NCBI RefSeq assembly: GCF_040938485.1
Contig: NW_027272137.1
Span: forward strand, 806,001 to 870,000
Reading direction: 5' to 3'
Source of the DNA: Diadema antillarum
Taxonomy: Eukaryota
Length of the DNA: 64,000 bases
Position numbers and translations under genes: made by a program. Below the pieces are notes generated by a model, which saw nothing but the letters and a program-made list of their open reading frames with translations, was not told where the DNA came from and made no database searches. Below, piece by piece: positions 12,501 through 46,241 of the stretch (position 1 is the stretch's first letter; every line of letters starts with the position of its first letter).

Positions 12501-15500
12501 ATCAGACTAGCTCATATTTTGACTGGATTTCCTCTTTAACTTGCTTTGATGTGGTCACGTGATTCGGATAAAAGTCTGAGGGAGAGATCGACAAATAATG
12601 AAAAGTGGTAGACTGAAATACGCTACTGGGATGAACAATGTGCAACATTTGTTGACTCAATCTGGAAAAGCTATGGATGAAAAATTAACGGAGAAATAAG
12701 AAAAGATGACTCAAGAGGGGGAGAGAGAGAGAGAGGGAGAGAGAGAAAGAGAGAGAGAAATACATGATGGAGGATATTGAAGGAACGAGTGATAGATAGA
12801 AAAAAGGAACCCTCGCACGTCATAGCGTTTATGCACGTAATCAGTATTACTGGGCGTGATCAAGCTATAAGCAATGATAAGTAAATACATTCACGTCTCG
12901 ACACAGCCTATGTTAACAGATAACCCGTACACACAGAGATCTTATTATGTAAGAAAGAAGTCTTTCTCACCTTGAGGTGACGTAATCACACAACAAACTC
13001 TCGAAGTTTGCTGAATACACATTAATAGCAGTAAAACCTATCCCTATATGCCTGCATATACAAATATGATGTAATATACGTTGTAAATGTGATCGTAAAT
13101 TGCTATAATAATACATGTATGACAGTATGAGTCTGTTAGGGGGGAAGAGTTGTCCCAAGTCAGTGTGTTTTGTATTTTCCACCATTGAATCCTCTCTTTC
13201 ACTGTAGAGTCTGAGCCGTGTCATAGGAATTGCTGTGGAAAAGAACGTGGATTCACGCTCAAATTTGTCGACTTCGCCCAACAGGTATGAAAAGTTCTCT
13301 TAAACCAGTAATTTCAGCAGACAAGCAAGCGCAGCACTCAAATACAGCACTTGACTCTCACGCCATGCACACATGAACACAGATACCTAAGTGGTTACTA
13401 TACTCTCTATACCCCAAAATCACGCCCTAGTGTTCGTTATTTTGTCAAATTTCAATGCAATAGCCATCATCAACCGACAATGCTGAGACTGTAGACTGAT
13501 ATCTATCAAGGACTCGTCATGTTAGGATTTTCAGGTTTCGTGTCCTCGGTCGACAAACACGTCACGTCACTGGATCTGCAACAGAAACATTAAAGTGGCG
13601 AAGGGGTCAAATTGTACTAATTAAATGTCAATTAACTCTGCACTTTGCAAAAAATGATTACAAATCTTACTCTATTGTCAAATATAAGTATTATACAGAT
13701 AAAGAACGACAGTAAATATTGGACAAAACACACTTATTTACTCCTAATGTTCTAATTATGTGGAAGCTGCAATACCTCAGACAACTCAGAGTTATCAAAA
13801 CGAATATCATTTGTGCCTCACTTCTTTTGAGCACCAGGTCACGAGTAATGCAGTAATATTCGAAGATATGAAAATTGCGTTATCTTAGATTTACTCTATT
13901 AAGATATAATATGATAACAATGAAAATGAGAATGATGATGACAATGTTGAAAATCGTGGTGATGCATACCATCACTTTTTAGAGTCGAACATCATTCTAT
14001 CGCATTACATCTGTTTTATATGGTCATCTTTCTGTAATGTTCATCATTTTCATTGTCAGTGTTCATAAACTTGGTATCTCCAGTATAAGCACGTTTATCA
14101 AAAGATAGGTAATGATATGACCTAGAGTGAAAGAGCCCGCAAAACTGCACATCAGTTTTGTTATTGCGAAACATCTGCAAAAAAAGTAAATTAACATTCC
14201 TTACATCTTTATATCTGTCGATACCATTTCATAAAGGTTTATTTACAATCTGATTCATTCATCCAGGTATTCTTTTTTAAGTCTTTATTTCCAACTCTAT
14301 TATCATCGTTGTCCTCATCTGCAAAACTGCTTGCGTCATTGTACATTTTATCATCACCAACACCATTTTTAATCATCGGCATTGTCATCCTATAGTAAAA
14401 AAAAAAAAAATACATGTAACATCATCGGGTTTTCTTTATTATCATCATCATTATCACTATGGTTTCGAGCTCCGTCATCATCATGGTTAACATAATCAAC
14501 ATTNNNNNNNNNNNNNNNNNNNNNNNNNNNNNNNNNNNNNNNNNNNNNNNNNNNNNNNNNNNNNNNNNNNNNNNNNNNNNNNNNNNNNNNNNNNNNNNNN
14601 NNNNNNNNNNNNNNNNNNNNNNNNNNNNNNNNNNNNNNNNNNNNNNNNNNNNNNNNNNNNNNNNNNNNNNNNNNNNNNNNNNNNNNNNNNNNNNNNNNNN
14701 NNNNNNNNNNNNNNNNNNNNNNNNNNNNNNNNNNNNNNNNNNNNNNNNNNNNNNNNNNNNNNNNNNNNNNNNNNNNNNNNNNNNNNNNNNNNNNNNNNNN
14801 NNNNNNNNNNNNNNNNNNNNNNNNNNNNNNNNNNNNNNNNNNNNNNNNNNNNNNNNNNNNNNNNNNNNNNNNNNNNNNNNNNNNNNNNNNNNNNNNNNNN
14901 NNNNNNNNNNNNNNNNNNNNNNNNNNNNNNANNNNNNNNNNNNNNNNNNNNNNNNNNNNNNNNNNNNNNNNNNNNNNNNNNNNNNNNNNNNNNNNNNNNN
15001 NNNNNNNNNNNNNNNNNNNNNNNNNNNNNNNNNNNNNNNNNNNNNNNNNNNNNNNNNNNNNNNNNNNNNNNNNNNNNNNNNNNNNNNNNNNNNNNNNNNN
15101 NNNNNNNNNNNNNNNNNNNNNNNNNNNNNNNNNNNNNNNNNNNNNNNNNNNNNNNNNNNNNNNNNNNNNNNNNNNNNNNNNNNNNNNNNNNNNNNNNNNN
15201 NNNNNNNNNNNNNNNNNNNNNNNNNNNNNNNNNNNNNNNNNNNNNNNNNNNNNNNNNNNNNNNNNNNNNNNNNNNNNNNNNNNNNNNNNNNNNNNNNNNN
15301 NNNNNNNNNNNNNNNNNNNNNNNNNNNNNNNNNNNNNNNNNNNNNNNNNNNNNNNNNNNNNNNNNNNNNNNNATCATCACCCCATCATCATCATCATCAT
15401 CATCATCATAGCCATCATTCTCGTCATCACCATTCAACATATTAAAGCTATCACTGCAGCCGTCATTATTAATCATTAACTGTTGCCATAGCGACTATTG

Positions 15501-16689: not shown

Positions 16690-18648
16690 TCGTTACGGTG
16701 AGTTGCGTTACTTACACGACAGCACACGCAGAAACATTATAAAGAAAGTTAATTGAATTCCTAATCACTCAAAAGGATAATACGCAGATGTAACGAAGAG
16801 TATTTTTTATATGGCTGTCGTGAACCTACATGTATTTGTAGTGGGTTGATAGACATATATGTTGCTCTCAAATGATTGTGTTAACTAGAAAGCGTTTGAG
16901 AAGGTGAAGAAACAATGGAAATAATTGATACCAAACGAGATGTGACGTCATGCGACGTCATACTCAGGCCTTGATCCTTCACCATTGTGACGTGCTCGTA
17001 ATACCTCTGTCCTTGGATGACCGGGCGTTGGAATGGACGACAAAGTTATCCGTAAAATTGGTCTGATTTCGCCGGATTTGAGCTAAACAATTACGTAAAT
17101 AACAGTGTTTTCATCTAAAGATAAGTGTCTTTTCTAGGCAAATTCCTTTCTTTAAACAAAGTAATCTGATTTCTTAATCTACCTTGATGCTACATCCGCT
17201 TTTCTGAAGGTGAAAACGACTGATTTGAAGAATAACATCGGTGCGATCAGCAAGCAGTGGGGAGGCTGGGTCCGAGAGATGTATACCAAGGCAGATAACT
17301 TCAGCATGACCTGTGAGTATGACTTCACTTCAACCATTTCTATTGTCCAAAGAGATATCAGCTTCTCTATATTTGTTTTTGTTGTATGAAACAGAATCAA
17401 TGAAGGAAGCAACAGGGAATCACTATATAGAAATCATGGCTGTCTAGTAAAGGTTAACTCGTTTATGGATTTGAGCGAAACAATTTAAAGCTGAACAGCA
17501 TTTCTCCACTTGATCATAACACAGTTCTAGTGACAGACGAGATGATTTGATGAAAAATTGCTGAAAACGTGTAAAATCTTTTGTTTTACTCTCCTTTGCA
17601 GTCCCAACAGATTTGGATGTGAGGACAAAGGCGACATTGATGGCCGCCATGTTTTTAATCGTGAGTATCATGGTACTTCTGTACAAGCTTTATTTGTCTG
17701 TACACTGCCTCTAATGAATGCTAAGCTACTGAACATCGACAAGTTCTTTTCTCATAATGCTTTCATTTAGCAAATTGTAAAAATGGGAACCCTAGTGATC
17801 ATGGGAAATGAAATAATGGCGTGAGTCCTCTGGCGTTTGGTAGAACAGTATGTAAATACTGAAGGGACTATCCTGACTATAGGTAAGACCTTTCCATCAT
17901 AAACATTCTACATACATACACACACTCACACAGACACATTTTCACATACTTGCCAGTTTACACTTTTCTTTGGGTGTGTGTTTGAATGGTTTGTCTGCTT
18001 TATATAAGACAGTAACTGTGTAAGTAAGTGCTTATGACGACGCTGGTTAAACTTACAGTTCCTTATTCCGAAGATTCGTTATTGCGAAAGTTCGTAATTC
18101 CGACAATGAAATAAAATTCGTTAATCCCAAGGTTCGTTAATCTGAAAAAAAAAAAGATAAGGTTCGTAATACCGAAGGCTCGTTAATAGTTTTTTTTTTT
18201 TTCACTCTGTGATTAACGAACCTTATTCCATTGTCGTACTATCCAGTCTTCGGAATTACGAACCTTATTTTATTTTCGGAGTAACGAACCTTCGGAATAA
18301 GGAGCATCACCGGACGACGAAATCTCACTTCTAACATCGCTCCCTTTGTTTGTGAACTTCTCAGGAAACTGAAGTAGAAAAGGGAACATGAAGAATAAAC
18401 ACGGTTTTGATATCATGTCGAAGGCAAAATTGGTTTTGCTGATGAATTTCTTTTCAAGTAATTCGATTTAATTGATTAATTGGATCCACCTCGATCCGCT
18501 TCTCCACCCAAATGTCACAAGCAGTCTCTTAAAGTGTATAATTACTAAGCTGTGTTTGTTCAATATCTTATGCCTTTATTTCATTATTCTCTTTTTTTAA
18601 AATCAGGAATTTGCGTACTACGAGAGAAAGAAGAACCGCAAAAGTTAA
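9379..18648 (+). CDS. PLSCR: Phospholipid scramblase gene A (9 coding exons, 313 aa)
   Basis: Exons 9379-9570, 10520-10658, 11278-11355, 13208-13284, 15552-15682, 16443-16563, 17210-17312, 17602-17660 and 18607-18648 join in frame with GT-AG introns (942 nt). Contains scramblase motifs [51 protein letters not shown] and ADNFSMTFPTDLDVRTKATL. Confidence 0.95.
10520..10658 (+). CDS. PLSCR: PLSCR gene A coding exon 2
   Basis: [46 protein letters not shown]; atag| and |gtaaga. Confidence 0.95.
11278..11355 (+). CDS. PLSCR: PLSCR gene A coding exon 3
   Basis: (I)VTPFEMENKYVIKNSMGQQIYYAFE; gcag| and |gtaaga. Confidence 0.95.
11914..12539. mobile_element. Kolobok-like MITE with long TIRs (gene A intron 3)
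   Basis: Inverted GAAATCCAGTC.AAATATGAG.TAGTCTGATAA ends; internal inverted AAATCGGATG..AATAAGGAAGTTATGACATTTTGAAGTTT blocks; right end CCTCT|TTAA. Confidence 0.7.
13208..13284 (+). CDS. PLSCR: PLSCR gene A coding exon 4
   Basis: (E)SEPCHRNCCGKERGFTLKFVDFAQQ; gtag| and |gtatga. Confidence 0.95.
14504..15372. other. N-run (masked or unresolved) in (ATC)n-rich context, with a single A at 14931
   Basis: Direct reading. Other N-runs: 630-834, 6176-6332, 30283-30410, 43860-43994, 52780-52932. Confidence 0.95.
15552..15682 (+). CDS. PLSCR: PLSCR gene A coding exon 5
   Basis: EVMRIVRPFKCCAGWPCCACINYCAYTIDVESPPGTVIGSVRQ; ccag| and |gtaaga. Confidence 0.95.
16443..16563 (+). CDS. PLSCR: PLSCR gene A coding exon 6
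   Basis: (T)ISAWKDHLDILDHQGNTVLKVRGPCCPCQAICCTDDVNFE; gtag| and |gtacgt. Confidence 0.95.
17210..17312 (+). CDS. PLSCR: PLSCR gene A coding exon 7
   Basis: VKTTDLKNNIGAISKQWGGWVREMYTKADNFSMT; gaag| and |gtgagt. Confidence 0.95.
17602..17660 (+). CDS. PLSCR: PLSCR gene A coding exon 8
   Basis: (F)PTDLDVRTKATLMAAMFLI; gcag| and |gtgagt. Confidence 0.95.
18056..18311. mobile_element. MITE built of GGTTCGTTATTCCGAA-like units, copy 2 (gene A intron 8)
   Basis: Inverted ends CCTTATTCCGAAG.TTCGTTA / TAACGAACCTTCGGAATAAGG with repeated internal units. Confidence 0.7.
18607..18648 (+). CDS. PLSCR: PLSCR gene A terminal coding exon 9
   Basis: EFAYYERKKNRKS-stop after a pyrimidine tract and tcag|; matches the PLSCR DFMFFE terminus and gene B exon 9. 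Confidence 0.9.
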   Translation, partial: EFAYYERKKNRKS

Positions 18649-27049: not shown

Positions 27050-30000
27050 GTACGTAAATTTACTACTTAAGGCCTCGATCCTTCGCTCTTTGTATTTTTC
27101 AATATGTTTATGATAATATTTACTACTTCATTGCAACTGATTGATAAACTGCCCTACATCGACGTAAATATACTATATGTATCTTGTCCGCTGACTATAC
27201 ATAGTGAGAATTACTTTCTTCTTTTTGAAGTGCACGGTCATTCCCTTTCCCTATCTTATCTTATAAATCCATCATGGTATAAATGTAAAGACCAGTGGCC
27301 CATTGCATAAAACTCACCATTGAATTTCAATGGTAACTACCGTCAAAATTAGGCGTCACAGCCAATCAGCATCAAGAATTATAACATTTACCGCTAATTT
27401 GAAGACTTACCGCCAGAAAGGAGCGGTAAGTCCAGCGGTAAAGTGTTTTATGCAACAGGGCCCAGATGTAGTAAATTGATTTTAGCTGTTGAAAAGAAAT
27501 CATCAAATTATCTTTGATATTATGAATCTCGCGCCATGTATGTACTCTTTTTTACGTGAACATTATTGCTATCTGCGCCATTATATACTTACATCATTTC
27601 TTGGACATTATCGGACATTCTTATTAATATCTCTCCTATTTTTCTCCTTCTTTCTGATAAAATTGACAAACTTGATAGACGGTCACCATGGGGTTGCCAG
27701 CACCTCCTGTGGAGTGGATGGACAGGCCAGCTGGGGTCAGTGGATGTCCCTCTGGTCTCGAATATCTTGCCCTCGTCGATCAGGTTCTCGTACACCAAGT
27801 CGTCGAGCTTTTTGAACGTAAGTTTGAGATGACCATTTATTGTAGACATTGTGTTTAATTCATGAGTTTATAGTACTTATAGCATCTCCATCACTGCACA
27901 TTGCATACTATTATCTGTATAATCTGCTATTTTAGAAACTGATTCTACATCCATATACATGAATACTGTTAACAAAGTGTATGTCACTGAAACTATCAAA
28001 AGAAATAAAGAAAAATATAAAAACTCTACCCTCAGTACGATACGCTACCCCCCCCCCCCCCCCAAAAAAAAAAGGCAGACTGTCGAGATGTCGATATTTT
28101 GCCATTATTTCATTTATTTGGATTTGGTCACTTTACACCATTTTGAGAGGAAAGTTGAAAATTTATCATTTCAAATCAGCTTAGATTATCTGTTGTTGTT
28201 GTTGTTGTTGTAAAGAAAGAACGAAGAGAGAAAAAAAATTGGGGCCCTATACAAATAATTTGCCCCAGACAATACTAACTTAAACACACATTATAAATCT
28301 TAGAGATATTAAACAAGAATATTAATTATACCATGTCTCCACGTGGGAGCTCATATCGTCTCCACGAGGGAGCTCATAGATTATCTGAAGAAAAAAATGT
28401 ACTGTATAGTTTGTTGTACAAGCTATCATATGTTTTACCTAGGTATAGTGAGCAAGGATTTAAAACTAGGGTGATTTTTTCTAATATCAACAATCGCATT
28501 GATCGTATAATCTATTTCCTTTGCTTGATATTATCTGGTTTCGAATATGACATAAAAGCTTTGATAGATAATATTAGAGCAATTCGATTCGTGTAGACAT
28601 GCGTGTATATACTACCCAGTATTCTGACTATTTTCATTGCCTAGCCCAGTTTTATGACAATCAAATAAGAAGATGTTTGTATTGCAACTGATTGACAAAT
28701 TGCCCCTCACCGTTGTAAATAAACACGGATTATTCGGTGTTTCAGTACTATAGCCATGATAAAAATCATGAGAATACGAATACATGGGATTCGAACCAAC
28801 AACCTCATGAAACTTGTCAGACAGGACAGTGATGGTTCTGATTCCTTATAGCAGCGGGTACTGCGCACGTATTATATTCAGATTAATGCACCGATAAAGC
28901 TCAGTTTGTCAATGATACATGTAATAAAAACAACTCTGCGCAAGAATGATTGATTTGAAGTTTTCACTACTCATTTTCAATTCCAACCACAGTTGTGACT
29001 CCATACGAGTTGGAAAATAAATATGTCATCAAGAATTCTATGGGACAACAAATATACTACGCTTTTGAAGGTAGGCCTGATTTTCTTTTGTGTGCAACGT
29101 TTTATTTATATTTATATGTACATGTATCTTATCATTCTAAAGTTCATTATGCTTTTACGAATCAAATTTAATGATGATGTCCTCACTTCACAAATCATTT
29201 TCGGGTATCATCAAACAACTATTTATTACTGCTTGTCAGTATTTGTTAGGGGACAGAAAAAACGAGGTCATTACTAATCTGTCTGCTGATGCCATTTGTT
29301 CTGTATCATCAAGTCGAATCCCCTTTTCTCCCCACTGTAGAATCTGAAACGTGCCATAGGAATTTTTGTGGAAACCAACGTGGATTTACGCTCGGGTTTT
29401 TAGACTACACCCAAAAGGTATAATAATCTATCATGGACACGTCATGCAAAGATCTACTTGTCTTTCGTGTCCTCTTTCATAAAACACACGTCATGTCACC
29501 ACATCTAGTAACAGAAATATATACGGCAAAGCGTTCAGAGTGGACCTATTAATTTCCAATAAACACTGCATTTTGCAAATTAGTACTCTCTAAAAGAAAT
29601 CGAGTGAAAATATTCACTCTCAAAGGAGTGAATACAAAAAAGAGTGAATTTAGAGTGAAATTGGAGTGAATTTCGAGTAAAAATGTTCATTATTCACTCA
29701 TTTTGGAGTGACCTCAGGGATCACTCGAAGATTTTGGAGTGATCCCTGACGTCACTCTAAAACGAGTGAAAATGAACATTTTCACTTAAAATTCACTCCA
29801 ATTTCACTCTAAATTCACTCTTTTTTGTATTCACTCCTTTAAGAGAGAAAATGTTCACTCGATTTTTTTTAGAGAGTAACTTTGGAATTTATCTTTTGTG
29901 AGATATACAGGTATAAAACAGTAGAGAATGTCTATTGATACTGCGCTAAAATGCCTTTCTAATTTTCGAATCAAATAATGTGAAAAACCTCTGGCTAATT

Positions 30001-33000
30001 GAGTAAAGTTAATGATGTGAAAGACCTTTGGCTGATTAAGCAAACGATGTAAAAGACATTTGGCTAATTAAGCAAATGCTGTCAATAGGACTGTTATAGC
30101 GTTTTATTTCTTTTGATCATATACTGTCTTTTTTTAATGTAAATGCATAGCAATATTACAAGACAATGATGATGGTCACATGATGATAATGACAATGCTT
30201 AATATAATATGATTGTAGAAAAATTATTGCGATAGTGATGATAAAGTTTATAATTATCACTTTTCTGGAATAGCATTACGATNNNNNNNNNNNNNNNNNN
30301 NNNNNNNNNNNNNNNNNNNNNNNNNNNNNNNNNNNNNNNNNNNNNNNNNNNNNNNNNNNNNNNNNNNNNNNNNNNNNNNNNNNNNNNNNNNNNNNNNNNN
30401 NNNNNNNNNNTTAGTATTCCACGGGAGACATAACTTCTTCTTCCTATTTCCTTTATTTTGTGTTCGAGCTTTCGGCCATGTCGGCCTTCATCAGGATCTA
30501 TACAGGCAGCTGACAGGCAAACAAAATGACAAATGTGCCACTGCCAGTGATATTTATAACATGACTTACATGTATGTGCTGTAATGTTATAAATATCACT
30601 GGCAGTGGCACATTTGTCATCTTGTTTGCATAGATCCTGATGAAGGCCGACACGGCCGAAAGCTCGAACACAAAATAAAGGAAATAAGAAGAAGAAGCTA
30701 CGGCTCCCGTGGAATACTAATTATACTGTCTTACGCCTACATAATGTCTCCGTTGCACGACCTGGAAGTTTAAGCGTTGGCACAAAATGTTTTGCATATA
30801 TATATAGTGCGATGATGCTGATACTCGTACCGTACGCCTCTGTCATCTTAGGAAGAATTATAGTCGAGACAATGTGACGATGACAAAAGATGTTGCAGGA
30901 AGCCGGCTAGCTTTTGTCATCATTACATTGTCTCGACTATATATATATATAATTTTTTTCCACAATGACCATTATGACCAATACTTCTCTCCTTACTTTG
31001 ATTCGTACATCTGCGACCATGTATACAGGAGGTGATGCGGTTAGTTCGCCCTTTTAAGTGTTGTGCTGGCTGGCCCTGCTGTGCTTGCTTTAATCACTGC
31101 GCCTATACCATCGATGTGGAATCACCCCCAGGAACAGTGATCGGCTCAGTCAGACAGACGTATGATTCTAAGTTTGATCTTTCGACTTAGCCCCACACTC
31201 ATTGGTATTAGCAGCTGAAATTAATATATGAGAAAAGCTGAATAGGTAGGAAGATCGATATAGATACAAACCAGGAAGTAAATGAAAGGTGCATAGACAG
31301 ACAGATAAATACATACCTACATACACACGAAGATATGCATGTACATGCATTTATCTATATAATCATGTGTATATAATTCTATTGATTGTATATCTATGCA
31401 TATTAATGTATTGAAGTATGCATGATAAGTCAACGTATGTTTTATACCTATACGCATGTGAGTACATACAATCTGAACAAAGAAATACAAATTTCATATA
31501 TACATAATAATGATAACACATTAATCTATTTTCACTAAAAGTCAGAAGAAAAATATGTTAAAATGTCGCAAGCGTTCGCGTAATCAGTCGTCAAATCGAT
31601 TTAGCATTCTAGTGGAGATCTTCAGTGGAGATCTGGACCCTCCTAAAACCTTAAATTAAAAACTTCAACCCCTGTGGTACTCTTACAAGTTTTAAGTATC
31701 GTATTGATATACACATGATATGCACGCTCATTTAAAAGATGTAAATAGTACGTAATATCATAACGTGTTCATTATATTATACTGGTACTCTAAGAAGGCG
31801 TTGCAAAAAAAGTCGAGCTGCAATAGATTGCAAATATCTATTGCAAATCTTGTATTTGATAGATCAACTGCAACTTGGAATCAGTCGGAAGTAACCGTTG
31901 CAAGAGCTTGCCATCAATTGCAAGTTAGAATTAATTTGCAATCAACAGCATCTTTCCTGTAAATAGCAGAATCGATTGTACGGTGCAATTGATTGCAAAT
32001 TTGCGATAATTTCAAGACTTGCGATTGATTTTGAGGATTTACAATTGATTGCAACTTTCTTGCAACGCTCCCTATAAGAGGTCAACACACTTTGAAAGAA
32101 GGCTGCTGGATCTCTGCATCGGCATTGTTTCTCATACTCCATATTATGAATCCTGCAATCACGCTGTTACAGTGGAAACTCAGCAAAGCGAGATCCTTTG
32201 GCCCAAGATAATTTGTTCTTTATATCAGACATTTTGTTTTATAAGTAGCCAATAAACAATACAAAACAAAGAAATGAATTTATTGGGACCGGAGAAATTA
32301 GTTTGCTAAATCGGGTATTTTGTTATAAACGCCTATCAGATCTCGTTGTATCGAGTTTTCACTGTACTTATTTCTGTCCCGGATGTAGTCTCAGCCCGTG
32401 GAAGGTTCACCTGGACATCCTCGATCACCATGGTAACACAGTTCTCAAAGTTCGGGGACCCTGCTGTCTCTGCCAGGGGGTCTGCTGCACGGAAGACGTG
32501 AACTTTGAGGTGTCAATTATCTCTTTTATATCTCTTTGTCTTAGAGTCACCAACCTATAACTCTCATCCTCCCTCTCTCTTCTCTCTCTTTATTGTCTTT
32601 CCTTTTGTCTGTATATTTCACTGAGTAACAGCAAGTTTCGATGTGTGTGTGTGTGTCTGTGTGTGTGTGTGTCTGTGTCTGTGTGTCTGTGTGTCTGTCT
32701 GTCTCTGTATCAGCACACATTTACCAGTGTTCAGTGCCAGTAAAATCTCAATCAGGCATGTGGCTATTGTCGCAGTGACATGTGACATGAGTGACATGAA
32801 GCTATAATATCTCTCATTACATTCGTAAATAACTTTGTGCCGAGGAAGAGTTAGTGGATTGGTACATACGTGTAAAATAAATGTTACTCTAACAGATAAA
32901 TGACTGTGTACCTTGTGAAATGTTTGTTCATATAAATCAACTGTGTAGGCTACATGCAGTAATCAATCGAAATGTGATGTGCAAGTGGCGTCACAATCAG

Positions 33001-37273: not shown

Positions 37274-38277
37274 GACATGATAGATTTATCTTAGTTAGAG
37301 CCGATGGAATACACTACTGTACTATGGTGCGATACTGTACAAATGAAAATGTTTGAGTTCTATATACCTAACAGCGTCCTTTAAAGTGGCCACTAAATCT
37401 TCCCACCATTCCAGTTATTGACTATAGACTCTAACTGCTTGTTATATTTTGTACGACATATGAATTGAGTGTTGTATGATGATGATATTAACAGTGAATG
37501 AGATAGAATCGCTTCATCCCTCTTTTTATCGTGATTTCGAACTGATGTCAAGAAATTTATGAGGACTTTGAGAAAATGTAGATGAACCTGATTGTGATTT
37601 AGTTAGTAATTCAATATTTTAACAATGAAATTGAAAATGATTAAGTGTGCAGTCTGAACAATACCATATTATGCAAAATGAAAAAAAAAAATTTAAACAA
37701 ATATTCATACATAATATAACCCTGTTTTACCTTGTTAAAATACAAATATAAAGATGTTATCGACTTAGGAAAGACACGCCTGTGACTGTATCTAATAATA
37801 AGGTTACTACATTGTACTGCAAACATAATTCACACAGTGCATTTCGTTGAGATATCAACTTCCATGTAAAGACTTGACCATGACGGATATAGGAAAGGTT
37901 CGATTACTCACAAGTAAACAGTTTTTGTGCGCGATTTCGTTTTTAAGTACGTTCCTCACTATACATAAGATGACTATGTTGTATACATTACATTAGCGTC
38001 TAAAAGTCATTGACATGAAAATGTGAATAAATGTTTATTATAAAACATATCTGTCTCAACAATTGTCACGTTTTGGTTTCGATTCCATCTTGTGTCCCTC
38101 GGAAGGAGAGTGGTCAATGAAATTACGTTACGAGAATGATTTGACTCCTAGAGTTATCAGTGAGAGTCCAAAGGCTATAAACATCCAAGGCGCACTCCTT
38201 TCGAAGTCTGGCAACGAGTCAAAAGGGGGCGCTGTTCGTGGGAAACGTTTCTTTCGTATCCTTGGAGGCACTTGGTT

Positions 38278-38313
38278 TTAGCTCTGGTTCTCTTGCTCGA
38301 AGAACATGAATTC
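38278..38313 (-). CDS. PLSCR: PLSCR gene C terminal coding exon 9
   Basis: [11 protein letters not shown]-stop; gcag| acceptor; minus-strand AATAAA at about 38034-38039. Confidence 0.9.
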   Translation of the reverse strand, partial: EFMFFEQENQS

Positions 38314-41300
38314 CTGCAGTTTGGGCGAGAAAGCACATTAGGTTGCGATGAAATGGATGGATGATCGGTTAAAAGATTATTCATTGGAATATTGGTGGGA
38401 TTGTACCGTGGTTCAAAATAAAAGGCTTACAAACAAACATGATATGAGAATAAAGTCTGCGCGTTTTTAATTAAGGGTTTTATGAACTGTAACCTCTACT
38501 TGTATGAATAACACGAACTTTTCACTCGAAACACTGTCATCGAAGCTTGCAAAATATTGTCTTGAAGTTATTTTCACATACAGCAGTTTTTATGAAAAGA
38601 ATACGTTTTCCTCGAAATATAGCTTCTGAGATGATTCGTTGCTGATCATTCCAAAGTCGACTGTCGACAAAGGATTATTTTGCCTTCGAAGGAGACAAAC
38701 AAATTTAATTTTCAATACCGGAACAATAATCTTATTTCAACCATGACCTGAAACCACCACTTATCAAATCGGTGGAATGACTCATAGGAATGAAATCGTT
38801 TGAAGTTATGTTACAGTACTTCCATCTTAATATACATCAAGTAGAGTGTCGAAAGATGGTATAAAATCACGCGTTTTGGAAATAGCAAAATGGCTGTCGA
38901 TTTAATATACCATATATGACGCCATGCACCTTTCGGCAGGATGGTGAAGTAAAATGAAAATTTCGACTGATTCGTTGGAAACGATTAACACACGTGATCC
39001 CATAGGGGGCGGTTTAGCACTCTTCATCACTATACGAACTTTGCACGCACCAAGAATTATCATAACGTCGAACTGAAATCAAGCTCTAAATTGATATGGT
39101 CTAAAGGCATTAATCGTGATATTCCGAGGTACTCACGAGCAAAAACATGGCTCCCAAGACAGTTGCCTTTGCCTTCACGTCAAGGTCCAGTGGGACTGAG
39201 AACAACAAAATAAAACAAAATGAAAGTGAAGAAAAATAGATACTTAACAGCGAAAACAGCAGCAATCCTGGAAAGAATGATTAATTGTCATTTCATATGG
39301 GTACTGTCATAGTGTAACTAAAGTTATGTTTATAGTGCGATCATTGCCATGATTGTTATGATTATCACCAAGATCAACATCACCACCATGATCATTCAAA
39401 TGTCGAATTCTAATTGATTGATCCTCGGATATTGTATCGCTGTCTGTTTTGTGTGTGTTTATTTGTGTTTATGTTTTATTCGTATGTGTGTGTTGGTGCT
39501 TTTGTGTGTCTCTTTAATCAGCCAGGCCAAAGCTTTGAAAAATATTATTAATACGTCAAGCATCAGATAATACATCCCATGCAAAAACGCGGGAGGAGGA
39601 ACAATATTTGAGGAAGGGGCGCGAAATGGAGTAAGACTTACAGGTGATGGCAAAGTTGTCTGCTCTCGTGCAACACTCTTTGAAGCAGCCAGGCCACTGC
39701 TTGGCGATCACTCCTAGATCTGTCTGGAGGTCGTTACTCTTCAACTGCGGCATGAAATTATCAGAAGGCAAACATATATCTTACTTTTACTGAAATAAGA
39801 AATCTATGCAGATAAACACAAAACATTGTCGACGGTCATACAAATTAATACAAAGTTAACAACACTAAGGATTTATCATCTTCAAGTTACGAAATAAAAC
39901 AGCAAACAAGTGATTGACATGAATGGACATAGTGTAACGAAACATCCAGACATTCAGGGTGTTCAGGGTCATATTTTCTTTCTTTGTATCATGCTTATTG
40001 ACGAAATTGTATCATATTTACGATTTTTTTTTAGATAGAAAAGGCACCTGGCTAAGAATTGCTATCCATGAAATACCGATTTCTTTGTGAGCAAAGGATT
40101 GTACGTCTTGTACTATTACAAAAGCCCTGCGACAAGATATTTCTATCCGTTATTGTGTTCATTCTAACCTTCCAACACATCCTTATCACAAAAGTCGTGT
40201 TGTTCCCCAGAAAATGATTAAGCTGCGGGAAGTCCTTGTGTAATACAAACATAATACTGAGATAACCGTCCAGCTTCCAATGGAATTTTTTTACTGTACC
40301 AGTGAAGACCTATACCTACTTCGTTTCAGTTTCCACAATTCCTTCGTTAAATATTACTAGCCCTTAAATTCCGGAGAAACCCCTTAAACTCAGCCTGATA
40401 TTACATTACTGAGCTGTAGATATGCGACGCTTATCATACCACCGGGTTATTATATAGGTTAAAAAAAAAACTAAACTAAACTAAACTAAACAAAGAAAAA
40501 AAAATACTTGCTCTGCACAAGCGCAAGACAGCTGTTTCCAATGTCCAACCCTACATCTGGGCCCCCCTTTCTTATCAAACGAGGGTTATGATTGATCCTG
40601 AAAGTGAGATAACTGACCCATTTATCAATACTCAGTCAACTATTAATAGTCTCTTTTTAATGAAGGACTTATAATCAAATTCAACTTCAAACTGATTGAA
40701 AAGTTACGATTGATGTATGGCATCATAATTTCTTTGGGGGACTTCAAGTAATTATTGATATCTGAGACTGATAATCATAATCTTTGATAAACCGGGGCCC
40801 AGATCTAAAGCTTAACGAGAGATGGAAAAGAGCTTCCAGTCAGCTGATCCTTACCCTGAAGTCAAGGTCACCTTGGCAACAGATCGCCTGGCAGAAGCAG
40901 CATGGTCCACGGACCTTCATAACAGGGTTCATGTCGGCGTCCATTATGTCCATATGTGGATACCACCAGCTCCGACTGGATAAGTAAACGGTATAACCTT
41001 ATAAACAGTCTGTTACAGAGTCTGATTGGGTGCAATGTCCTCACCCCCCCCCCTCCCTCCCTTTAGGTAAAAAGGAAGAGTTTGACCAAAAATCGGTTTT
41101 AAGCGCCATGAATTCTTGAACACTTTAAAGACCATCAGATAATAACAAGGAGAAAAATAAAATATTTCCAATGACACCTCACTTGTTGCATAGCAACGAA
41201 TATAGTTACTCTTGATTTCATATATATATTTTTAGCATGTTTAATCGACGATAATGGAGGTAACTCGTTTTACGATAAAACTCTTCCTATATTAATGACG

Positions 41301-42009
41301 TTCGAAAACAGAGGGACTGTGATCGCGGATTGATCCCAGTCAAGCTGTAAGACATGTGGAGTTATTAGTATACGTCATGATGGGACTATGGTACTCTTGG
41401 ACTAAAGAATCATATTAGCATACGGTATGATACTCCACTATCACTGACTATAATTATGGAGTATAGTTTAAGATCATATTACGATTATGCTATATTGTTG
41501 TTACATGTATCATAATCATGATCCTGTCCGTCTGTGGTAATCAACCTTCAATGTTAGCACTGATCTCACAGGAGGTACTGCAATCACGAGCTTCTCAGCA
41601 GCTATATAATTAGCTAAATAATTACTCATATTTTGTACACTGGAGTAAAGCATAAGGACATAACGGACAAAACACTCCGTCCTTAGGGACGAGGCAGACT
41701 CCAAATTATATCCCCTATCCCACATCAGTGCTCTTACTTGAAAAGCAATTGCATCAACCTTTAACACTACTGTTTTATTAGTTTATTTGTTAATTATTTA
41801 TTTATTTATTCATTTATTCATTTATTTACTTACTTACTTACTTATTCATTCATATAGATAAATTAACATTTCTGTTTTAAAGCCTTCATTGCTTAACTTA
41901 TGTAGATTATTTGATTTGTCTCTCCTTTTCCCAGATGTACAAATGAGTACCAGGGAGGGAGAATGAAACATACTGTGAGACGATAAGTTGAAAGAAGAGA
42001 ATGCTAAAG

Positions 42010-42040
<31 letters not shown>

Positions 42041-45000
42041 AGGGTGCAAAGAAAGCAAAGAAGGTACAAGAAAAGAGAAAGAAGAGGTAGGAGGAGGAGG
42101 AGGAGGAGATGGATGGAAAGGGAGAACGAGTCTTCACCTCTGCCTGGCGTATCCAATGACGTTTCCTGGCGGTGCTTCAACCTGGATCCGGTAGGCACAG
42201 ACATCCGAATTGGCGCACCAGCAGCAGCCAGCGCAGCACTGAAACGGACGCGTAATCTTGATCACTTCCTGTCAAGACAAAGGGGACCAATGGAATCAGC
42301 CAACACAGATAATTTGGTAAGCAAAATCAATGGAATCATTTGTATGACACGCAATACAAACCTGAAACAATTAAGTTCCATAGCCATTTGCTGTATGCTC
42401 ATGATAACTAATGTTTCAAAAGAATCACTTACATTATGACACCATCATTGTTTAATTCATGATAAATGGGAAGATAAAGGAATCTGAATCTGGATACGAA
42501 TCTAACATTTTCCTTTGTAAAGAGCCGGGATAATTTAGAAAAACCATCCAGCTCTATGATGATGTATGTTCAAGCTATCAGTATGCGCTCCTAGCCTTAG
42601 AAGCATATATATCAATGATGAATAATTCAGTGTAATATAATAAAATTCAAAACTGTAAAATGTCGCATTACAAGTGATGTAATGGTTGTTTGCCCTATGA
42701 TAAAGTGAATTCACACCATAGTGGTCGTATACGCACTTTTACCAAAATGTTGTTGTTGTTGTTGTTAAAATGTATTTATTCAGGATAAAAAGTTCAGCAA
42801 AAGCTGTTTTACAACAATGTCCTGTATTAAAATAGATATAAAAACAGTCTCAAATGCAGTTTCTAATGCAGTGGATTTCATGCATGTCATATATAAATTG
42901 AATCGAATTATTCAAACTGAAATATCAAATTTAAAAAAAACGCAGTAAAATACATACCTTCCCCATGTTGTCGACGATGTGCAGCAAAAAACTCGATTCT
43001 TTAACAAAAGAAAGAAAAGAGAAAAAGATGTTCCGTTTCCCAGATTAATTCAAAGCTATGAAAAATTTAGAAATTGTTCTATTTGTTTATAATGCTTATA
43101 GCTATGAAACTGTAGTATGGTAATCGAGTGATATTCCAAACATGCCAAAGGTCCGTTATTCCCCAACACACAAATTCTGTATTCCTCGCTGTTCGTTTTC
43201 AACGTCGGAAAATGAAGTAAGGTTAATAGTCAAAGGTTCGTTAATTAAAAGATGAAATAAGTTTCGTTATTCCGAAGGTACGCCTATCAAAAAATGAAAT
43301 AAGGTTCGTTATACCAAAGGTTCGTTTATCCAATGAAATAAGGTTCGTTATACCAAAGGTTTGATTGTCCAGAAATGAAATTAGGTTCGAAATGACAAAC
43401 ATTTGGAAATTTTCAGAGTATATTTTTGGGTTGAAATTATGTAATGAGTTATTCATTATACTTCACCCCCCCCCCCCCCCCAGCATAGTCGGCGTCAGTG
43501 TGATAAAAGATGAATTATATTCAGGGCTGTTTAATTATATTCTGACCTATGTTAAACCAATGATTACATGCTAAAGCTTTGGAGGGGTAAAATTATTGGA
43601 TTTTTATTTCATGCAGAAAGATTTAAAAATCGTGCACGTAAGTACCTCACCTGTGATTGCCAAAGATACGACGAATTATGATCACGCAAGGAGCATATTG
43701 CTTATTGATATCTTCCCGAAGAGGTTTTTGGTTTGTCGTCTTGTGTGTGTGTTTTCCCCTTCTCAGAATTACTTTCCAAGTAGCTCGAACAAAAGTGCTG
43801 ACTACAGTTGATCGAAATAATATGTTGAACTGAACCGAATAAAACTGAATCAATTCATCNNNNNNNNNNNNNNNNNNNNNNNNNNNNNNNNNNNNNNNNN
43901 NNNNNNNNNNNNNNNNNNNNNNNNNNNNNNNNNNNNNNNNNNNNNNNNNNNNNNNNNNNNNNNNNNNNNNNNNNNNNNNNNNNNNNNNNNNNNNATATAC
44001 CACTGAATATATACAAAACGTTTACCTTCAAAAGCAAAATAGATTTGCTGACCCAGTGAGTTCTTCACGGCGTATTTATTTTTCATTTGAATGCCAGTTA
44101 CAGCTGTGAGGAAGGAGATAAGAATTAGAAGAAAAAATTGGTGTAAGGTGACTCAGGAACATTGACATAGACATCATACTGGACAACTGAAATGATTAAA
44201 AGATATTAATTTTTGAAAGAGCGAGACAATTGAATACGTGAATATAAGAACGGCCCAAGTCCAAATTTAGCTATCATCTTTGGAGATCCTTAGTAATGGC
44301 AATGCAGATAATCAATCAAAGGATTCAATCAAATCTTTTATTTGAATTTTGTATGCATAACATTCCCATAAGTGAAATATGAAATTGAGAAGTTATTTGT
44401 TGGTGTTTTCTCCCTCTCGAAATTCTCTCTACTGGATTTGTGTTTTTCTTACATTCAGGTATTCAAATATAAGATATCTTGTATATTTCTTTGTGCCCTT
44501 GAAATTAAAAATCAATGTAAAAACTATAATTATAATACCAAAAGAGCAACTGAAATATGCGTGGTCAAACAAAACGCCAGTATCAAACAGTAACAATGGT
44601 GAAAGAAAAGAAGAAGTGAAGCTACTTGATGATCCGTTTGTCGCAACAAAATATATAGATAACTCTAGTAAATTAAACGCCCTATAACATGCATACAATG
44701 ATCTCCATCATTGGGGTGGTCTTCGAATTCATTCCTGGCATTAATGGTATACAGCATACTCTTGATCCGATAGGTGCAATATAATCTCCTAAAAGCCAAC
44801 ATCATTGTCTGTAGTCGAGCGTAATATGGGTAATATGAGTGTTGTTGTTTTTTTTATCTAGAAATAATCATCAATGCATTTTGTATGATTTTGGAATATA
44901 CTGTACCATGCAGCATGTGATCAGCAAAAACACGTGATAAACAATGATTATGGTCGCAATTACATTGAGTTCTCTATATTAATCTACCTTCAAAGACTTC

Positions 45001-46241
45001 GACCAGCTGATGAACAAGAAGCTGATCAATCTGTAGAAGGTATTCCAAACCCGGTGGACAGCTATCCGCACCCTCCGGTCGATCCATCCAACGGGATTTC
45101 TCTGGCTGCATCTCAACCTGCCATTTTGTTTTCATTGTCACGTGTACAGAAGACAAAATTACTTGTACAATTTATCATGTGCGTGTACGTTAACATGACT
45201 GATATCAGATAAGCAGATTTTTATTTTTCCCTATAAAGAACTTGCAAGAATTTTGAGAGGAAATCCACCCAAAAATAGATAAACTTCACAAGAAAGAAAA
45301 AAATATTCCCTATAATAGAACGATAAAAAATGACAAAAATAGGATGAGAAATAAGGAAGATATGACATTTTAAAATTTCACAGTTTTTATTTTCGGAAAG
45401 CGTTTTTTGACCAGTCCACATGAATATTCAAGTCAGCAAGTTGACGATGTCATGCTCTCAAAATCTCTTATTCATTTCATACAAAAATGACAAAAATCTC
45501 ATATTTCAGCTGTATAAATATAAAATTTGTCTTAAACCTGCACCCAAAATAAAAAGGACAAATGTTAACTGTGATATATCTTGGTATGGGAACATGTTTT
45601 TACTTGTATTAACTAAGAATAACAAATATTCCGAATTTCTTATATAACATTTATATGAAAAATTGTGAGAGTATGACATCGTCAAGTCACTCATTTCAAT
45701 ATTCATAAGGACTGGTCAAGAAATGTTTTCCGAAAAATTTGAAACTTCAAAGTGGCATATCTACCTTATTTCTTATCCGATTTTTGTCATTTTTGCATCA
45801 TTTTGTAGGGAATATTTTTCTCTTTCTTTTAAAGTTTATTTATTTTTGGGGTGGATGTCTTTTGAAAGCACTGGAAAGCTGGTTCTGCAGATGGGCATTC
45901 AGCTGCTCTGTGTCAAAACTTCGGTAGTACTCTTATCTCATTACAGAAATGAACTGTTATCAAACCACTTGTTCACGCGCTGTTTCTTTCAAATTACCTG
46001 TTAGCATCACTAGGTTTACATGATATGCAGAATAATGTTATATGTAATCATTTGATACGTTCGATTAACACACATCCACTCACAAACAAACGCGGAAATT
46101 CATGACCAAATTAAACCCTGAATGGACTGTCCTTATAGTCCTCAAATCAAAACACATGAAAGACTAAAAGTCCCGTTTTGTGGCTTTCGAGAGTAGTCCA
46201 CGTAATCACGCAATGAGCATACATACCACTCCCGATGCCAT
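38278..46241 (-). CDS. PLSCR: Phospholipid scramblase gene C (9 coding exons, 237 aa; exon 4 shortened by 12 codons)
   Basis: Minus-strand exons 46227-46241, 44988-45117, 44026-44103, 42958-42998, 42138-42268, 40855-40975, 39642-39744, 39137-39195 and 38278-38313 join in frame (714 nt) with no internal stops and canonical GT-AG. Confidence 0.9.
39137..39195 (-). CDS. PLSCR: PLSCR gene C coding exon 8
   Basis: (F)[19 protein letters not shown]; tcag| and |gtgagt. Confidence 0.95.
39642..39744 (-). CDS. PLSCR: PLSCR gene C coding exon 7
   Basis: [34 protein letters not shown]; gcag| and |gtaagt. Confidence 0.95.
40559..40800. mobile_element. Harbinger-like MITE (gene C intron 6)
   Basis: CT|GGGCCCCCC..TTATCAAA ... 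TTTGATAAACCGGGGCCC|AG. Confidence 0.65.
40855..40975 (-). CDS. PLSCR: PLSCR gene C coding exon 6
   Basis: (S)[40 protein letters not shown]; ccag| and |gtaagg. Confidence 0.95.
42138..42268 (-). CDS. PLSCR: PLSCR gene C coding exon 5
   Basis: [43 protein letters not shown]; acag| and |gtgaag. Confidence 0.95.
42748..42824 (-). mobile_element. L2/CR1-type 3' tail
   Basis: Minus strand CAGGA...GTAAAACAG...GCTGAAC...TCCTG, then AATAAA and an (ACA)n tail. Confidence 0.55.
42958..42998 (-). CDS. PLSCR: PLSCR gene C coding exon 4 (41 nt versus 77 nt in paralogues)
   Basis: (E)[13 protein letters not shown]; strong pyrimidine tract with taaag| and |gtatgt; phases 1/0 as in paralogues. Confidence 0.85.
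43150..43400. mobile_element. Partial MITE of the same GGTTCGTTA family (gene C intron 3)
   Basis: Tandem AATGAAATAAGGTTCGTTATACCAAAGG units; boundaries approximate. Confidence 0.55.
44026..44103 (-). CDS. PLSCR: PLSCR gene C coding exon 3
   Basis: (A)[25 protein letters not shown]; acag| and |gtaaac. Confidence 0.95.
44988..45117 (-). CDS. PLSCR: PLSCR gene C coding exon 2
   Basis: [43 protein letters not shown]; gcag| and |gtagat. Confidence 0.9.
45253..45864. mobile_element. Long-TIR palindromic MITE related to 11914-12539 (gene C intron 1)
   Basis: About 150-bp inverted arms, visible as mirror-image pseudo-ORFs 45221-45421(-) and 45723-46004(+), plus an inner inverted pair; boundaries approximate. 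Confidence 0.75.
46227..46241 (-). CDS. PLSCR: PLSCR gene C putative first coding micro-exon (MASGV)
   Basis: Pyrimidine tract and ccag| at 46264, then caagATG GCA TCG GGA GTG|gtatgt; phase 0 matches the next exon. Inferred from splice signals only. Confidence 0.6.

What the first reader, a model, noticed from the sequence alone, without database searches (positions are those of the whole stretch)
42958..42998. Scramblase paralogue C lacks the conserved Cys-rich loop of exon 4 through an in-frame 12-codon deletion
Seen in sequence: exon 4 is 77 nt in A, B and D (ESEPCHRNCCGKERGFTLKFVDFAQQ; ESETCHRNFCGNQRGF...; ESECCHRVWCREHRGFTLHVVDNMNQ) but only 41 nt in C ([14 protein letters not shown]). 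It keeps a strong acceptor, a GTATGT donor and the correct phases, and the other eight exons are intact. Established knowledge: the equivalent human PLSCR1 segment is DTDCCTRNCCGPSRPF, conserved across the family. Inference: C is probably an expressed variant lacking one Cys cluster, which could change acylation, membrane anchoring or barrel geometry. ATCGAGTTT occurs in both C and D exon 4 in different frames, so the loss may be two compensating deletions (14+22 nt) rather than one.
Basis: partly seen in the sequence, partly recalled or inferred. Interest (0 to 1): 0.72.

Follow-up and report, generated by a model that had tools for sequence, protein, structure and literature searches.

The report
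One-haplotype 36-bp deletion in urchin scramblase

Summary
Exon 4 of scramblase gene C (42998-42958, minus strand) is 41 nt, against 77 nt in A, B and D. It has AG/GTATGT splice sites and correct phases, and all nine exons are intact.

The interpretation needs correcting.
- The window is D. antillarum GCA_040938485.1, contig JBFRCO010001249.1. The assembly's authors describe it as retaining both haplotypes.
- The gap is already in RefSeq as XP_071476909.1.
- The second haplotig (XP_071480275.1) and the D. setosum orthologue (XP_072175065.1) keep the full 77-nt exon ([26 protein letters not shown]).
The missing codons lie inside the exon, not in the N-run.

The lost segment has the same length in 200 of 208 scramblases and contains C, R, C, R and F residues that are 87-98% conserved. 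By motif spacing it matches human PLSCR1 C148-F160, whose cysteines are S-acylated in macrophages. AlphaFold2 predicts a short helix between strands 3 and 4 that is replaced by a tight hairpin, with the barrel kept.

dN/dS is about 0.02-0.03, so the gene is constrained. The other haplotype has its own 4-codon deletion at the Ca2+-binding loop; the scan noted such a deletion on another piece of this genome. Expression could not be tested. I read this as a recent, probably hypomorphic allele.

The parts
42958..42998 (-). Exon 4 of scramblase gene C, 41 nt. The deletion junction lies between 42987 and 42986 (after AATCGAGTTTTT).
   Evidence: sequence, splice sites, phase. (alignment to the other haplotig and D. 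setosum; a single 36-nt deletion at offset 12).
46227..46241 (-). Coding part of exon 1 (ATG..., MASGV) with a GTATGT donor.
   Evidence: 219 of 220 nt around it are identical to the other haplotig. It is conserved in D. setosum and used in RefSeq model XP_071480275.1.
44988..45117 (-). Exon 2 ([16 protein letters not shown]...VEVFE, phase 1 at its end).
   Evidence: (Pfam profile 9-34).
44026..44103 (-). Exon 3 (...[13 protein letters not shown]).
   Evidence: (profile 36-60).
42138..42268 (-). Exon 5, holding the canonical Cys cluster QCCAGCCWC (equivalent of the human 184-189 palmitoylation motif).
   Evidence: (profile 87-123).
40855..40975 (-). Exon 6.
   Evidence: (profile 128-160).
39642..39744 (-). 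Exon 7, with the start of the Ca2+-binding motif (TRADNFAIT) intact in this haplotype.
39137..39195 (-). Exon 8 ([11 protein letters not shown]...).
38278..38313 (-). Exon 9 with the stop codon ([11 protein letters not shown]).
42743..42935 (-). Insertion of about 193 nt in intron 4, starting 22 nt after the exon 4 donor. It is present only in this haplotype.
   Evidence: absent from the other haplotig and from D. setosum.
43860..43994 (.). N-run in intron 3. The public record continues across it at the same length. I did not read those letters, and the run is irrelevant to the missing codons.
13208..13284 (+). Exon 4 of paralogue A, 77 nt.
29341..29417 (+). Exon 4 of paralogue B, 77 nt.
60311..60387 (-). 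Exon 4 of paralogue D, 77 nt.

Best explanation
Gene C is an old, strongly constrained echinoid member of the PLSCR (PF03803) family. In the sequenced D. antillarum individual, one of its two haplotypes (this window) carries a single recent 36-bp in-frame deletion inside exon 4. The deletion removes C72-F83 (CHRCCCGAFRGF, D. setosum numbering) and turns V84 into L at the junction. It lies between imperfect direct repeats (GTTTTTG ... GTTTTG), which points to replication slippage or a simple breakage-repair event (inferred). In the intact protein the lost residues are predicted to form a short Cys/Arg-rich helix inserted between beta-strands 3 and 4 of the Tubby-like 12-stranded barrel. Without them the two strands are predicted to join through a two-residue turn and the barrel is kept. 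What is lost is four cysteines, which correspond by spacing to human C149, C153 and C154 next to C148 (all S-acylated in human macrophages), plus two nearly invariant arginines. I infer that the allele makes a folded protein with reduced or altered membrane attachment or partner binding, that is, a hypomorph or a tolerated variant that is segregating in the species rather than fixed. Shown: the deletion, its allelic status, the conservation, the constraint on the gene. Inferred: mutational mechanism, folding, functional effect, expression.
For: - Identity of the window: it is 100% identical to GCA_040938485.1 contig JBFRCO010001249.1. Its authors report that assembly as uncollapsed (1.75 Gb against about 703 Mb haploid, 84.4% duplicated BUSCOs, HiFi reads from one individual; PMC13511894).
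- Two D. antillarum copies only sit in the 90% cluster: P0262 (this window, 238 aa, gap) and P0261 (contig JBFRCO010001584.1, 245 aa, full loop). D. setosum P0181 has the full loop.
- The contigs are collinear (D-C-B) and 95-99.6% identical across the 5' half of C and its flanks.
- A single 36-nt deletion explains the exon.
- The segment length is invariant in 200 of 208 relatives. Conservation of the lost residues: C72 87%, R74 97%, C77 95%, R81 98%, F83 95%.
- The C clade includes a Lytechinus pictus orthologue that keeps the loop.
- dN/dS is 0.015-0.032 among the three copies. Derived changes are 11 synonymous to 2 non-synonymous on this haplotype and 13 to 2 on the other.
- AlphaFold2 on the intact protein gives helix 71-80 with pLDDT about 70. 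The deleted form gives strands 69-77 and 80-84 with pLDDT 88-92 and pTM 0.85.
- The best Foldseek matches are 1zxu and the Tubby C-terminal domains.
- The Pfam score drops from 230 to 193 bits but stays far above the 25.4 cut-off.
- Human C148/149/153/154 are S-acylated (PMC13380729).
Against: - No transcript or raw-read evidence could be obtained: no RNA run was listed and the single run search is spent.
- AlphaFold2 is known to be insensitive to destabilising deletions, so 'the barrel is kept' is weak evidence.
- The correspondence with the human residues rests on invariant motif spacing and published site numbers, not on an alignment with a human sequence fetched here.
- The two copies differ by dS of about 0.20, and by 15-24% in the introns of the 3' half. 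That is much more than the 2.52% genome-wide heterozygosity, so a recent segmental duplication instead of allelism is not strictly excluded.
- The age and population frequency of the deletion are unknown.
Confidence: 0.64

Rival explanations
1. One reading: paralogue C as such is an expressed, functional scramblase variant that has lost one Cys cluster, fixed or common in the species, neutral or adaptive.
For: The frame and splice sites are intact, and constraint on the gene is strong. The fold is predicted to be kept. NCBI's pipeline, which used 12 RNA-seq runs, produced a protein model with this exon structure.
Against: The other haplotype of the same animal and D. setosum keep the loop. The loop length is invariant in 200 of 208 relatives, and the L. 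pictus C orthologue keeps the loop. Constraint measured over the whole branch says nothing about the time since the deletion.
Confidence: 0.1
2. Gene C is losing constraint in D. antillarum (early pseudogenisation, or redundancy among at least seven PLSCR genes). Both haplotypes of the reference animal carry different in-frame deletions in conserved motifs: the 12-codon Cys/Arg loop here, and 4 codons (TRAD) at the Ca2+-binding loop on the other.
For: The exon 7 deletion of 12 nt in the other haplotig is genomic, not a splice choice. T203, A205 and D206 are at least 90% conserved. The adult animal therefore has no D. setosum-like copy. Pfam scores fall to 193 and 211 bits against 230. The other cluster genes checked show no such indels between haplotypes (D; A).
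Against: There are no frameshifts, stops or broken splice sites in either copy. Synonymous changes heavily outnumber non-synonymous ones on both haplotype branches, P about 1e-6 and 6e-8 against neutrality. Both indels are multiples of three.
Confidence: 0.17
3. Assembly or consensus artefact: the 36-nt gap does not exist in the animal's DNA.
For: Coverage per haplotype is only about 11x, and the gap is flanked by T-runs.
Against: HiFi reads have mean Q34 and their typical errors are 1-2 nt homopolymer slips, not 36 nt. The gap is exactly in frame, within unique exon sequence, on a haplotig that also differs at neighbouring SNPs and by a 193-nt intron insertion.
Confidence: 0.04
4. Long-lived, functionally different haplotypes kept by balancing selection, one without the loop and one without the Ca2+ site.
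For: The 3' half of the gene is as divergent between the two haplotigs as either is from D. setosum. Exons 6-9 differ at 11, 13 and 10 sites, and the introns are 76-85% identical.
Against: Other low-identity blocks occur nearby in the same contig pair, so the pattern is not specific to this gene. The exon 4 deletion sits in the less divergent 5' part. There are no population data.
Confidence: 0.05

Closest known systems
Human PLSCR1 (phospholipid scramblase 1), segment C148-F160
   Same: Same family (PF03803). It has the same spacing between the upstream Cys/Arg segment and the canonical Cys cluster at 184-189. It has the same predicted 12-stranded barrel with a buried C-terminal helix (PMC10371867).
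   Different: The window's allele lacks the whole segment. Gene C also has only a very short N-terminus instead of the proline-rich domain. In human PLSCR1, C148/149/153/154 are S-acylated in macrophages (PMC13380729), but no deletion or mutant of this segment was found in the papers read here.
D. setosum XP_072175065.1 and the second D. antillarum haplotype XP_071480275.1
   Same: They are the orthologue and the allele of the same gene, 97-98% identical outside the indels, with the same nine-exon structure.
   Different: Both keep the 77-nt exon 4. The second haplotype instead lacks 4 codons (TRAD) in exon 7.
Tubby C-terminal domain and LURP-one-like At5g01750 (PDB 1c8z, 1i7e, 1zxu)
   Same: These are the best structural matches of the predicted model (probability 0.99-1.00). 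This agrees with the published Tubby-like superfamily assignment (PMC2639001).
   Different: Sequence identity is only 8-10%. They are not scramblases, and the match is to a predicted structure, not a solved one.
Drosophila Scramb1
   Same: It is a PLSCR family member in which the canonical Cys cluster and the Ca2+ site are each required for function in vivo (PMC11335299).
   Different: The mutated residues there are those of the canonical cluster and the Ca2+ loop, not the upstream segment lost here.

Membership tests
Phospholipid scramblase family (Pfam PF03803) | Full-length match to the family profile above the curated cut-off | tested here: met
   P0262 scores 192.7 bits over profile positions 10-221 against a cut-off of 25.4. 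The single exons map in order on the profile.
Phospholipid scramblase family (Pfam PF03803) | Conserved segment C-x-R-x-C-C-G-x-x-R-G-F between strands 3 and 4 (human C149-F160) | tested here: not met
   It is deleted in this allele. It is present with invariant length in 200 of 208 relatives.
Phospholipid scramblase family (Pfam PF03803) | Canonical Cys cluster (human 184-CCCPCC-189, the palmitoylation motif) | tested here: met
   QCCAGCCWC is encoded in exon 5. Whether it is acylated cannot be tested here.
Phospholipid scramblase family (Pfam PF03803) | Ca2+-binding motif (human D273-D284) followed by a hydrophobic C-terminal helix | tested here: met
   [12 protein letters not shown] is present in this haplotype, though position 1 is R rather than D. 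A helix is predicted at 214-232. The other haplotype lacks TRAD.
Phospholipid scramblase family (Pfam PF03803) | 12-stranded Tubby-like barrel around the C-terminal helix | tested here: met
   The AlphaFold2 model has pTM 0.85 and 12 strands plus the helix. Foldseek finds 1zxu and Tubby. This is prediction only.
Phospholipid scramblase family (Pfam PF03803) | Ca2+-dependent lipid scrambling, S-acylation, membrane localisation | not testable with these tools
   This needs expression and biochemical assays.
Allelic variant (as opposed to a separate paralogue) | Second copy collinear and near-identical in an assembly known to retain both haplotypes, with a single copy in the congener | tested here: met
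   Searches show the same gene order and 95-99.6% identity over the 5' half and flanks. One search covers the uncollapsed assembly. One search shows one D-C-B locus in D. setosum. Caveat: the 3' half is 76-85% identical.
Processed or decaying pseudogene | Frameshifts, stops, lost splice sites, dN/dS near 1 | tested here: not met
   The CDS is an open 714 nt with all AG/GT sites. dN/dS is 0.015-0.032.

The most novel reading that the evidence does not exclude
The scramblase C locus of D. antillarum carries two old, functionally distinct haplotype classes kept by balancing selection, one lacking the S-acylatable Cys/Arg loop and one lacking the start of the Ca2+-binding loop. The vertebrate members of this family act in cell-autonomous antiviral defence, and this species has been hit by pathogen-driven mass mortality. 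The reference animal would then be a heterozygote for the two classes.
Probability: 0.06. Interest if true: 0.65.

Novelty: new variant of a known kind. Interest (0 to 1): 0.3.

Why it matters
The upstream Cys/Arg segment of PLSCR proteins is as conserved as the well-studied palmitoylation motif. It was recently found to be heavily S-acylated in human macrophages, but the papers I read contain no mutant of it. A natural allele that removes exactly this segment from an otherwise intact, strongly constrained scramblase is a ready-made construct for testing what the segment does. The intact allele-like orthologue and a Ca2+-loop deletion allele are available as comparators. The case is also a caution for reading uncollapsed assemblies: what looked like a difference between paralogues is a difference between two haplotypes of one animal.

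Tried and rejected
- RNA evidence: the look-up of sequencing runs listed no RNA run for 38000-45200, and its single search is spent, so read laying could not be used.
- PDB sequence search with exon 5 found no solved scramblase.
- I aligned the single exons to a full-length protein to build a search profile. The fragments misaligned, so I dropped it.
- MAFFT of the four paralogous exon 4 regions aligned C's polypyrimidine tract with the coding loop of the others. I considered an acceptor-shift model and rejected it, because the allele and the orthologue have the same acceptor and the same first 12 exon bases.
- The two-deletion model (14+22 nt) is rejected.
- The hidden-exon-in-the-N-run model is rejected on homology, without reading the masked letters.
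- A slippage model with deletion between the two GTTTT repeats needs one extra substitution, so it is less parsimonious than a plain deletion at offset 12. Both remain possible.
- The Apostichopus model P0177, which also lacks the segment, looks like a gene-model error (intron-like residues replace exon 4), so I do not count it as a second natural case.
- No model coordinates are available, so I could not measure the position of the lost helix relative to the canonical Cys cluster.

Full report
**1. The observation**

The minus strand between 44100 and 42200 shows exon 3 ending ...TTTGCTTTTGAAG|gtaaac. After a polypyrimidine tract ending gttaaag comes a 41-nt exon (42998-42958), followed by gtatgt. 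With the G carried over from exon 3 it reads [14 protein letters not shown]. The next exon begins [18 protein letters not shown].

Similarity searches among stop-free stretches of the window found four scramblase genes:
- A, plus strand, about 9.4-18.6 kb
- B, plus strand, 26.9-35 kb
- C, minus strand, 46.2-38.3 kb
- D, minus strand, 63.1-56.7 kb

They share exon boundaries. Exon 4 is 77 nt in A, B and D and 41 nt in C, each with AG and GT. Pfam PF03803 matches the C exons in order, and exon 4 of A and D covers profile positions 62-86. The nine C exons join into one open 714-nt reading frame.

**2. Where the window comes from**

A search of protein representatives with exon 5, followed by word searches, gave RefSeq proteins of Diadema antillarum and D. 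setosum. The 90% cluster around the C product has three members:
- XP_072175065.1 (D. setosum, 242 aa)
- XP_071480275.1 (D. antillarum, contig JBFRCO010001584.1, 245 aa)
- XP_071476909.1 (D. antillarum, contig JBFRCO010001249.1, 238 aa)

The last is the window's gene C, gap included. The locus fetched from JBFRCO010001249.1 is 100% identical to window 16855-45561 on either side of the two N-runs. So the window is record positions 806001-870000 of that contig. The public record continues across the N-runs at the same length.

**3. Allele, not paralogue**

The authors of assembly GCA_040938485.1 report that it retains both haplotypes of one individual. It is 1.75 Gb against a haploid estimate of about 703 Mb, 84.4% of BUSCO genes are duplicated, and it was built from PacBio HiFi reads (PMC13511894; preprint).

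The second contig carries the same D-C-B order. It is 95-99.6% identical to the window from 58.6 kb down to 42,987 and again below 37.2 kb. D. setosum has one such locus on a chromosome-scale record.

In both the second haplotig and D. setosum, exon 4 of C is 77 nt and reads [26 protein letters not shown]. Removing 36 nt at offset 12 of the other allele's exon gives the window's exon, with one synonymous difference left (CTA/CTG). The deletion therefore removes C72-F83 and changes V84 to L.

It lies between GTTTTTG and GTTTTG, which hints at slippage, although a plain deletion with no junctional microhomology is the most parsimonious placement.

The allele and the orthologue begin the exon with the same AATC(G/A)AGTTTTT, and D's ATCGAGTTT aligns with the part of the intact C exon that reads ATCGGTGCT.
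- The missing codons lie between the retained ends of the exon in both intact copies, so the N-run in intron 3 cannot hide them.

**4. How unusual the loss is**

In an alignment of 208 scramblases of 200-420 aa, from deuterostomes, molluscs, annelids and others, the segment E67-N90 has exactly 24 residues in 200. The window's protein has 12. The other outliers are evident gene-model errors or very divergent proteins.

Within the lost twelve residues the conservation is: C72 87%, R74 97%, C76 77%, C77 95%, G78 78%, R81 98%, G82 75%, F83 95% (nearly invariant columns also).

A maximum-likelihood tree puts Diadema C with a Lytechinus pictus protein (support 100/98) and Diadema D with a Strongylocentrotus purpuratus protein (100/98). 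C and D therefore separated before those sea urchin lineages split, and the L. pictus C orthologue keeps the loop.

**5. Constraint**

| Comparison | dN/dS |
|---|---|
| Window vs other haplotype | 0.032 |
| Window vs D. setosum | 0.023 |
| Other haplotype vs D. setosum | 0.015 |

Polarised with D. setosum, this haplotype has 11 synonymous and 2 non-synonymous derived changes, one of which is the deletion junction. The other haplotype has 13 and 2. The binomial P against a neutral 80% non-synonymous expectation is about 1e-6 and 6e-8. The gene is not a long-standing pseudogene. These counts cannot date the deletion.

**6. The other haplotype is not wild type either**

Its exon 7 lacks 12 nt, so [13 protein letters not shown] becomes KECCNFAIT. 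This is a genomic deletion, not a splice choice. T203, A205 and D206 are at least 90% conserved. By established knowledge this is the start of the EF-hand-like Ca2+ loop (human D273-D284). Mutation of that loop abolishes function in Drosophila Scramb1 (PMC11335299), and F281 in it is needed for Ca2+ binding in human PLSCR1 (PMC10371867).

The reference animal thus has no copy like the D. setosum one. Pfam scores are 230 bits (D. setosum), 211 (other haplotype) and 193 (this haplotype). The D products of the two haplotypes have equal length with one substitution, and the A exons align without gaps.

**7. Structure**

AlphaFold2 was run with an 88-sequence alignment.
- The intact D. setosum protein has strands 61-67 and 83-89 separated by a helix at 71-80. 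pLDDT is about 70 in that block, and pTM is 0.84.
- The deleted protein has strands 69-77 and 80-84 joined by a two-residue turn. pLDDT is 88-92, and pTM is 0.85.
- Foldseek's best matches for the deleted model are At5g01750 (1zxu) and the Tubby C-terminal domains (probability 0.99-1.00), in line with PMC2639001.

The deletion therefore excises an inserted element between two neighbouring antiparallel strands. The prediction says the barrel can close without it, but AlphaFold2 is a poor judge of stability.

**8. What the lost element may do**

The spacing between this segment and the canonical Cys cluster is invariant (34 residues in 90 of 93 proteins matched by a motif pair). The human sites follow the pattern CC-x3-CC at 148-154, ahead of 184-189. 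On that basis Diadema 71-77 (FCHRCCC) corresponds to human 148-154.

Site-specific acyl-biotin exchange in THP-1 macrophages found long-chain S-acylation at C148-149 among the most abundant sites, and also at C153 and C154, rising on inflammatory stimulation (PMC13380729). I found no mutant of this segment in the papers read.

My inference is that the allele yields a folded protein with fewer acylation sites and without two invariant arginines, so its membrane attachment or partner binding is weakened. This step is inferred, not shown.

**9. Expression**

No RNA run was listed. The protein collections hold these sequences only from NCBI genome annotation, with no transcript-derived copies.

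RefSeq gives three different 5' ends for the three copies (MKTKWQ..., MASGV..., MQPEK...). Yet the MASGV exon 1 with its donor is present in all three DNAs. This suggests thin transcript support. The promoter-proximal region is nearly identical between the haplotypes (219 of 220 nt).

**10. Verdict**

The feature is real and correctly described. It is a heterozygous, haplotype-specific deletion in an uncollapsed assembly and is already present in RefSeq as a predicted protein. It is a new natural variant of a known protein family, of modest interest. Its main use is as a ready-made test of the conserved upstream Cys/Arg segment, and as a reminder to check the second haplotype before calling paralogue differences.

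Noticed in passing
L004:17578-17668 (other haplotig JBFRCO010001584.1, exon 7 of gene C): A 12-nt in-frame deletion removes TRAD at the start of the Ca2+-binding motif. Both haplotypes of the reference animal therefore carry different in-frame deletions in conserved motifs of the same gene.
   Followed up: yes
window 42743-42935 (intron 4 of C, minus strand): An insertion of about 193 nt is present only in this haplotype, starting 22 nt after the exon 4 donor. It ends in (CAA)6 and is flanked by ATTTT-like short repeats. It may be a small mobile element, and it lies within 100 nt of the exon deletion.
   Followed up: partly
window 37295-41900, against L004:15578-24853: The 3' half of gene C is only 76-85% identical between the two haplotigs, while the flanks are 95-99%. 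It is about equally distant from D. setosum (exons 6-9 differ at 11, 13 and 10 sites). The other haplotig also has about 5 kb extra in intron 7. This could be deep coalescence, introgression or conversion; it is unexplained.
   Followed up: partly
window 44988-45117 (exon 2 of C): There are six synonymous differences between the haplotypes in 130 nt, while the surrounding 1.26-kb block is 98.5% identical overall. Four of them cluster in codons 9-18 on the other haplotype.
   Followed up: no
window 28992-31160 (gene B exons 3-5): The RefSeq models for B on both haplotigs (227 and 200 aa) skip exons 3-5 or more. The exons are present and open in the window and match the D. setosum protein at 96-100%. 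This is probably an annotation problem rather than gene decay.
   Followed up: partly
window 46227-46241 and 45118-45141: The three RefSeq models of the same gene use three different starts. The MASGV first exon with a GTATGT donor is conserved in both haplotypes and in D. setosum.
   Followed up: partly
window 43250-43400 (intron 3 of C), and about 18040-18270 downstream of A: There are repeated units of the type ...aacgaaccttatttcatt..., apparently one dispersed repeat family. A run of 17 G lies near 43470.
   Followed up: no
window 30283-30410 and 43860-43994: These N-runs have the same length as real sequence in the public record, so they are masked, not assembly gaps. I did not read the letters.
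   Followed up: no
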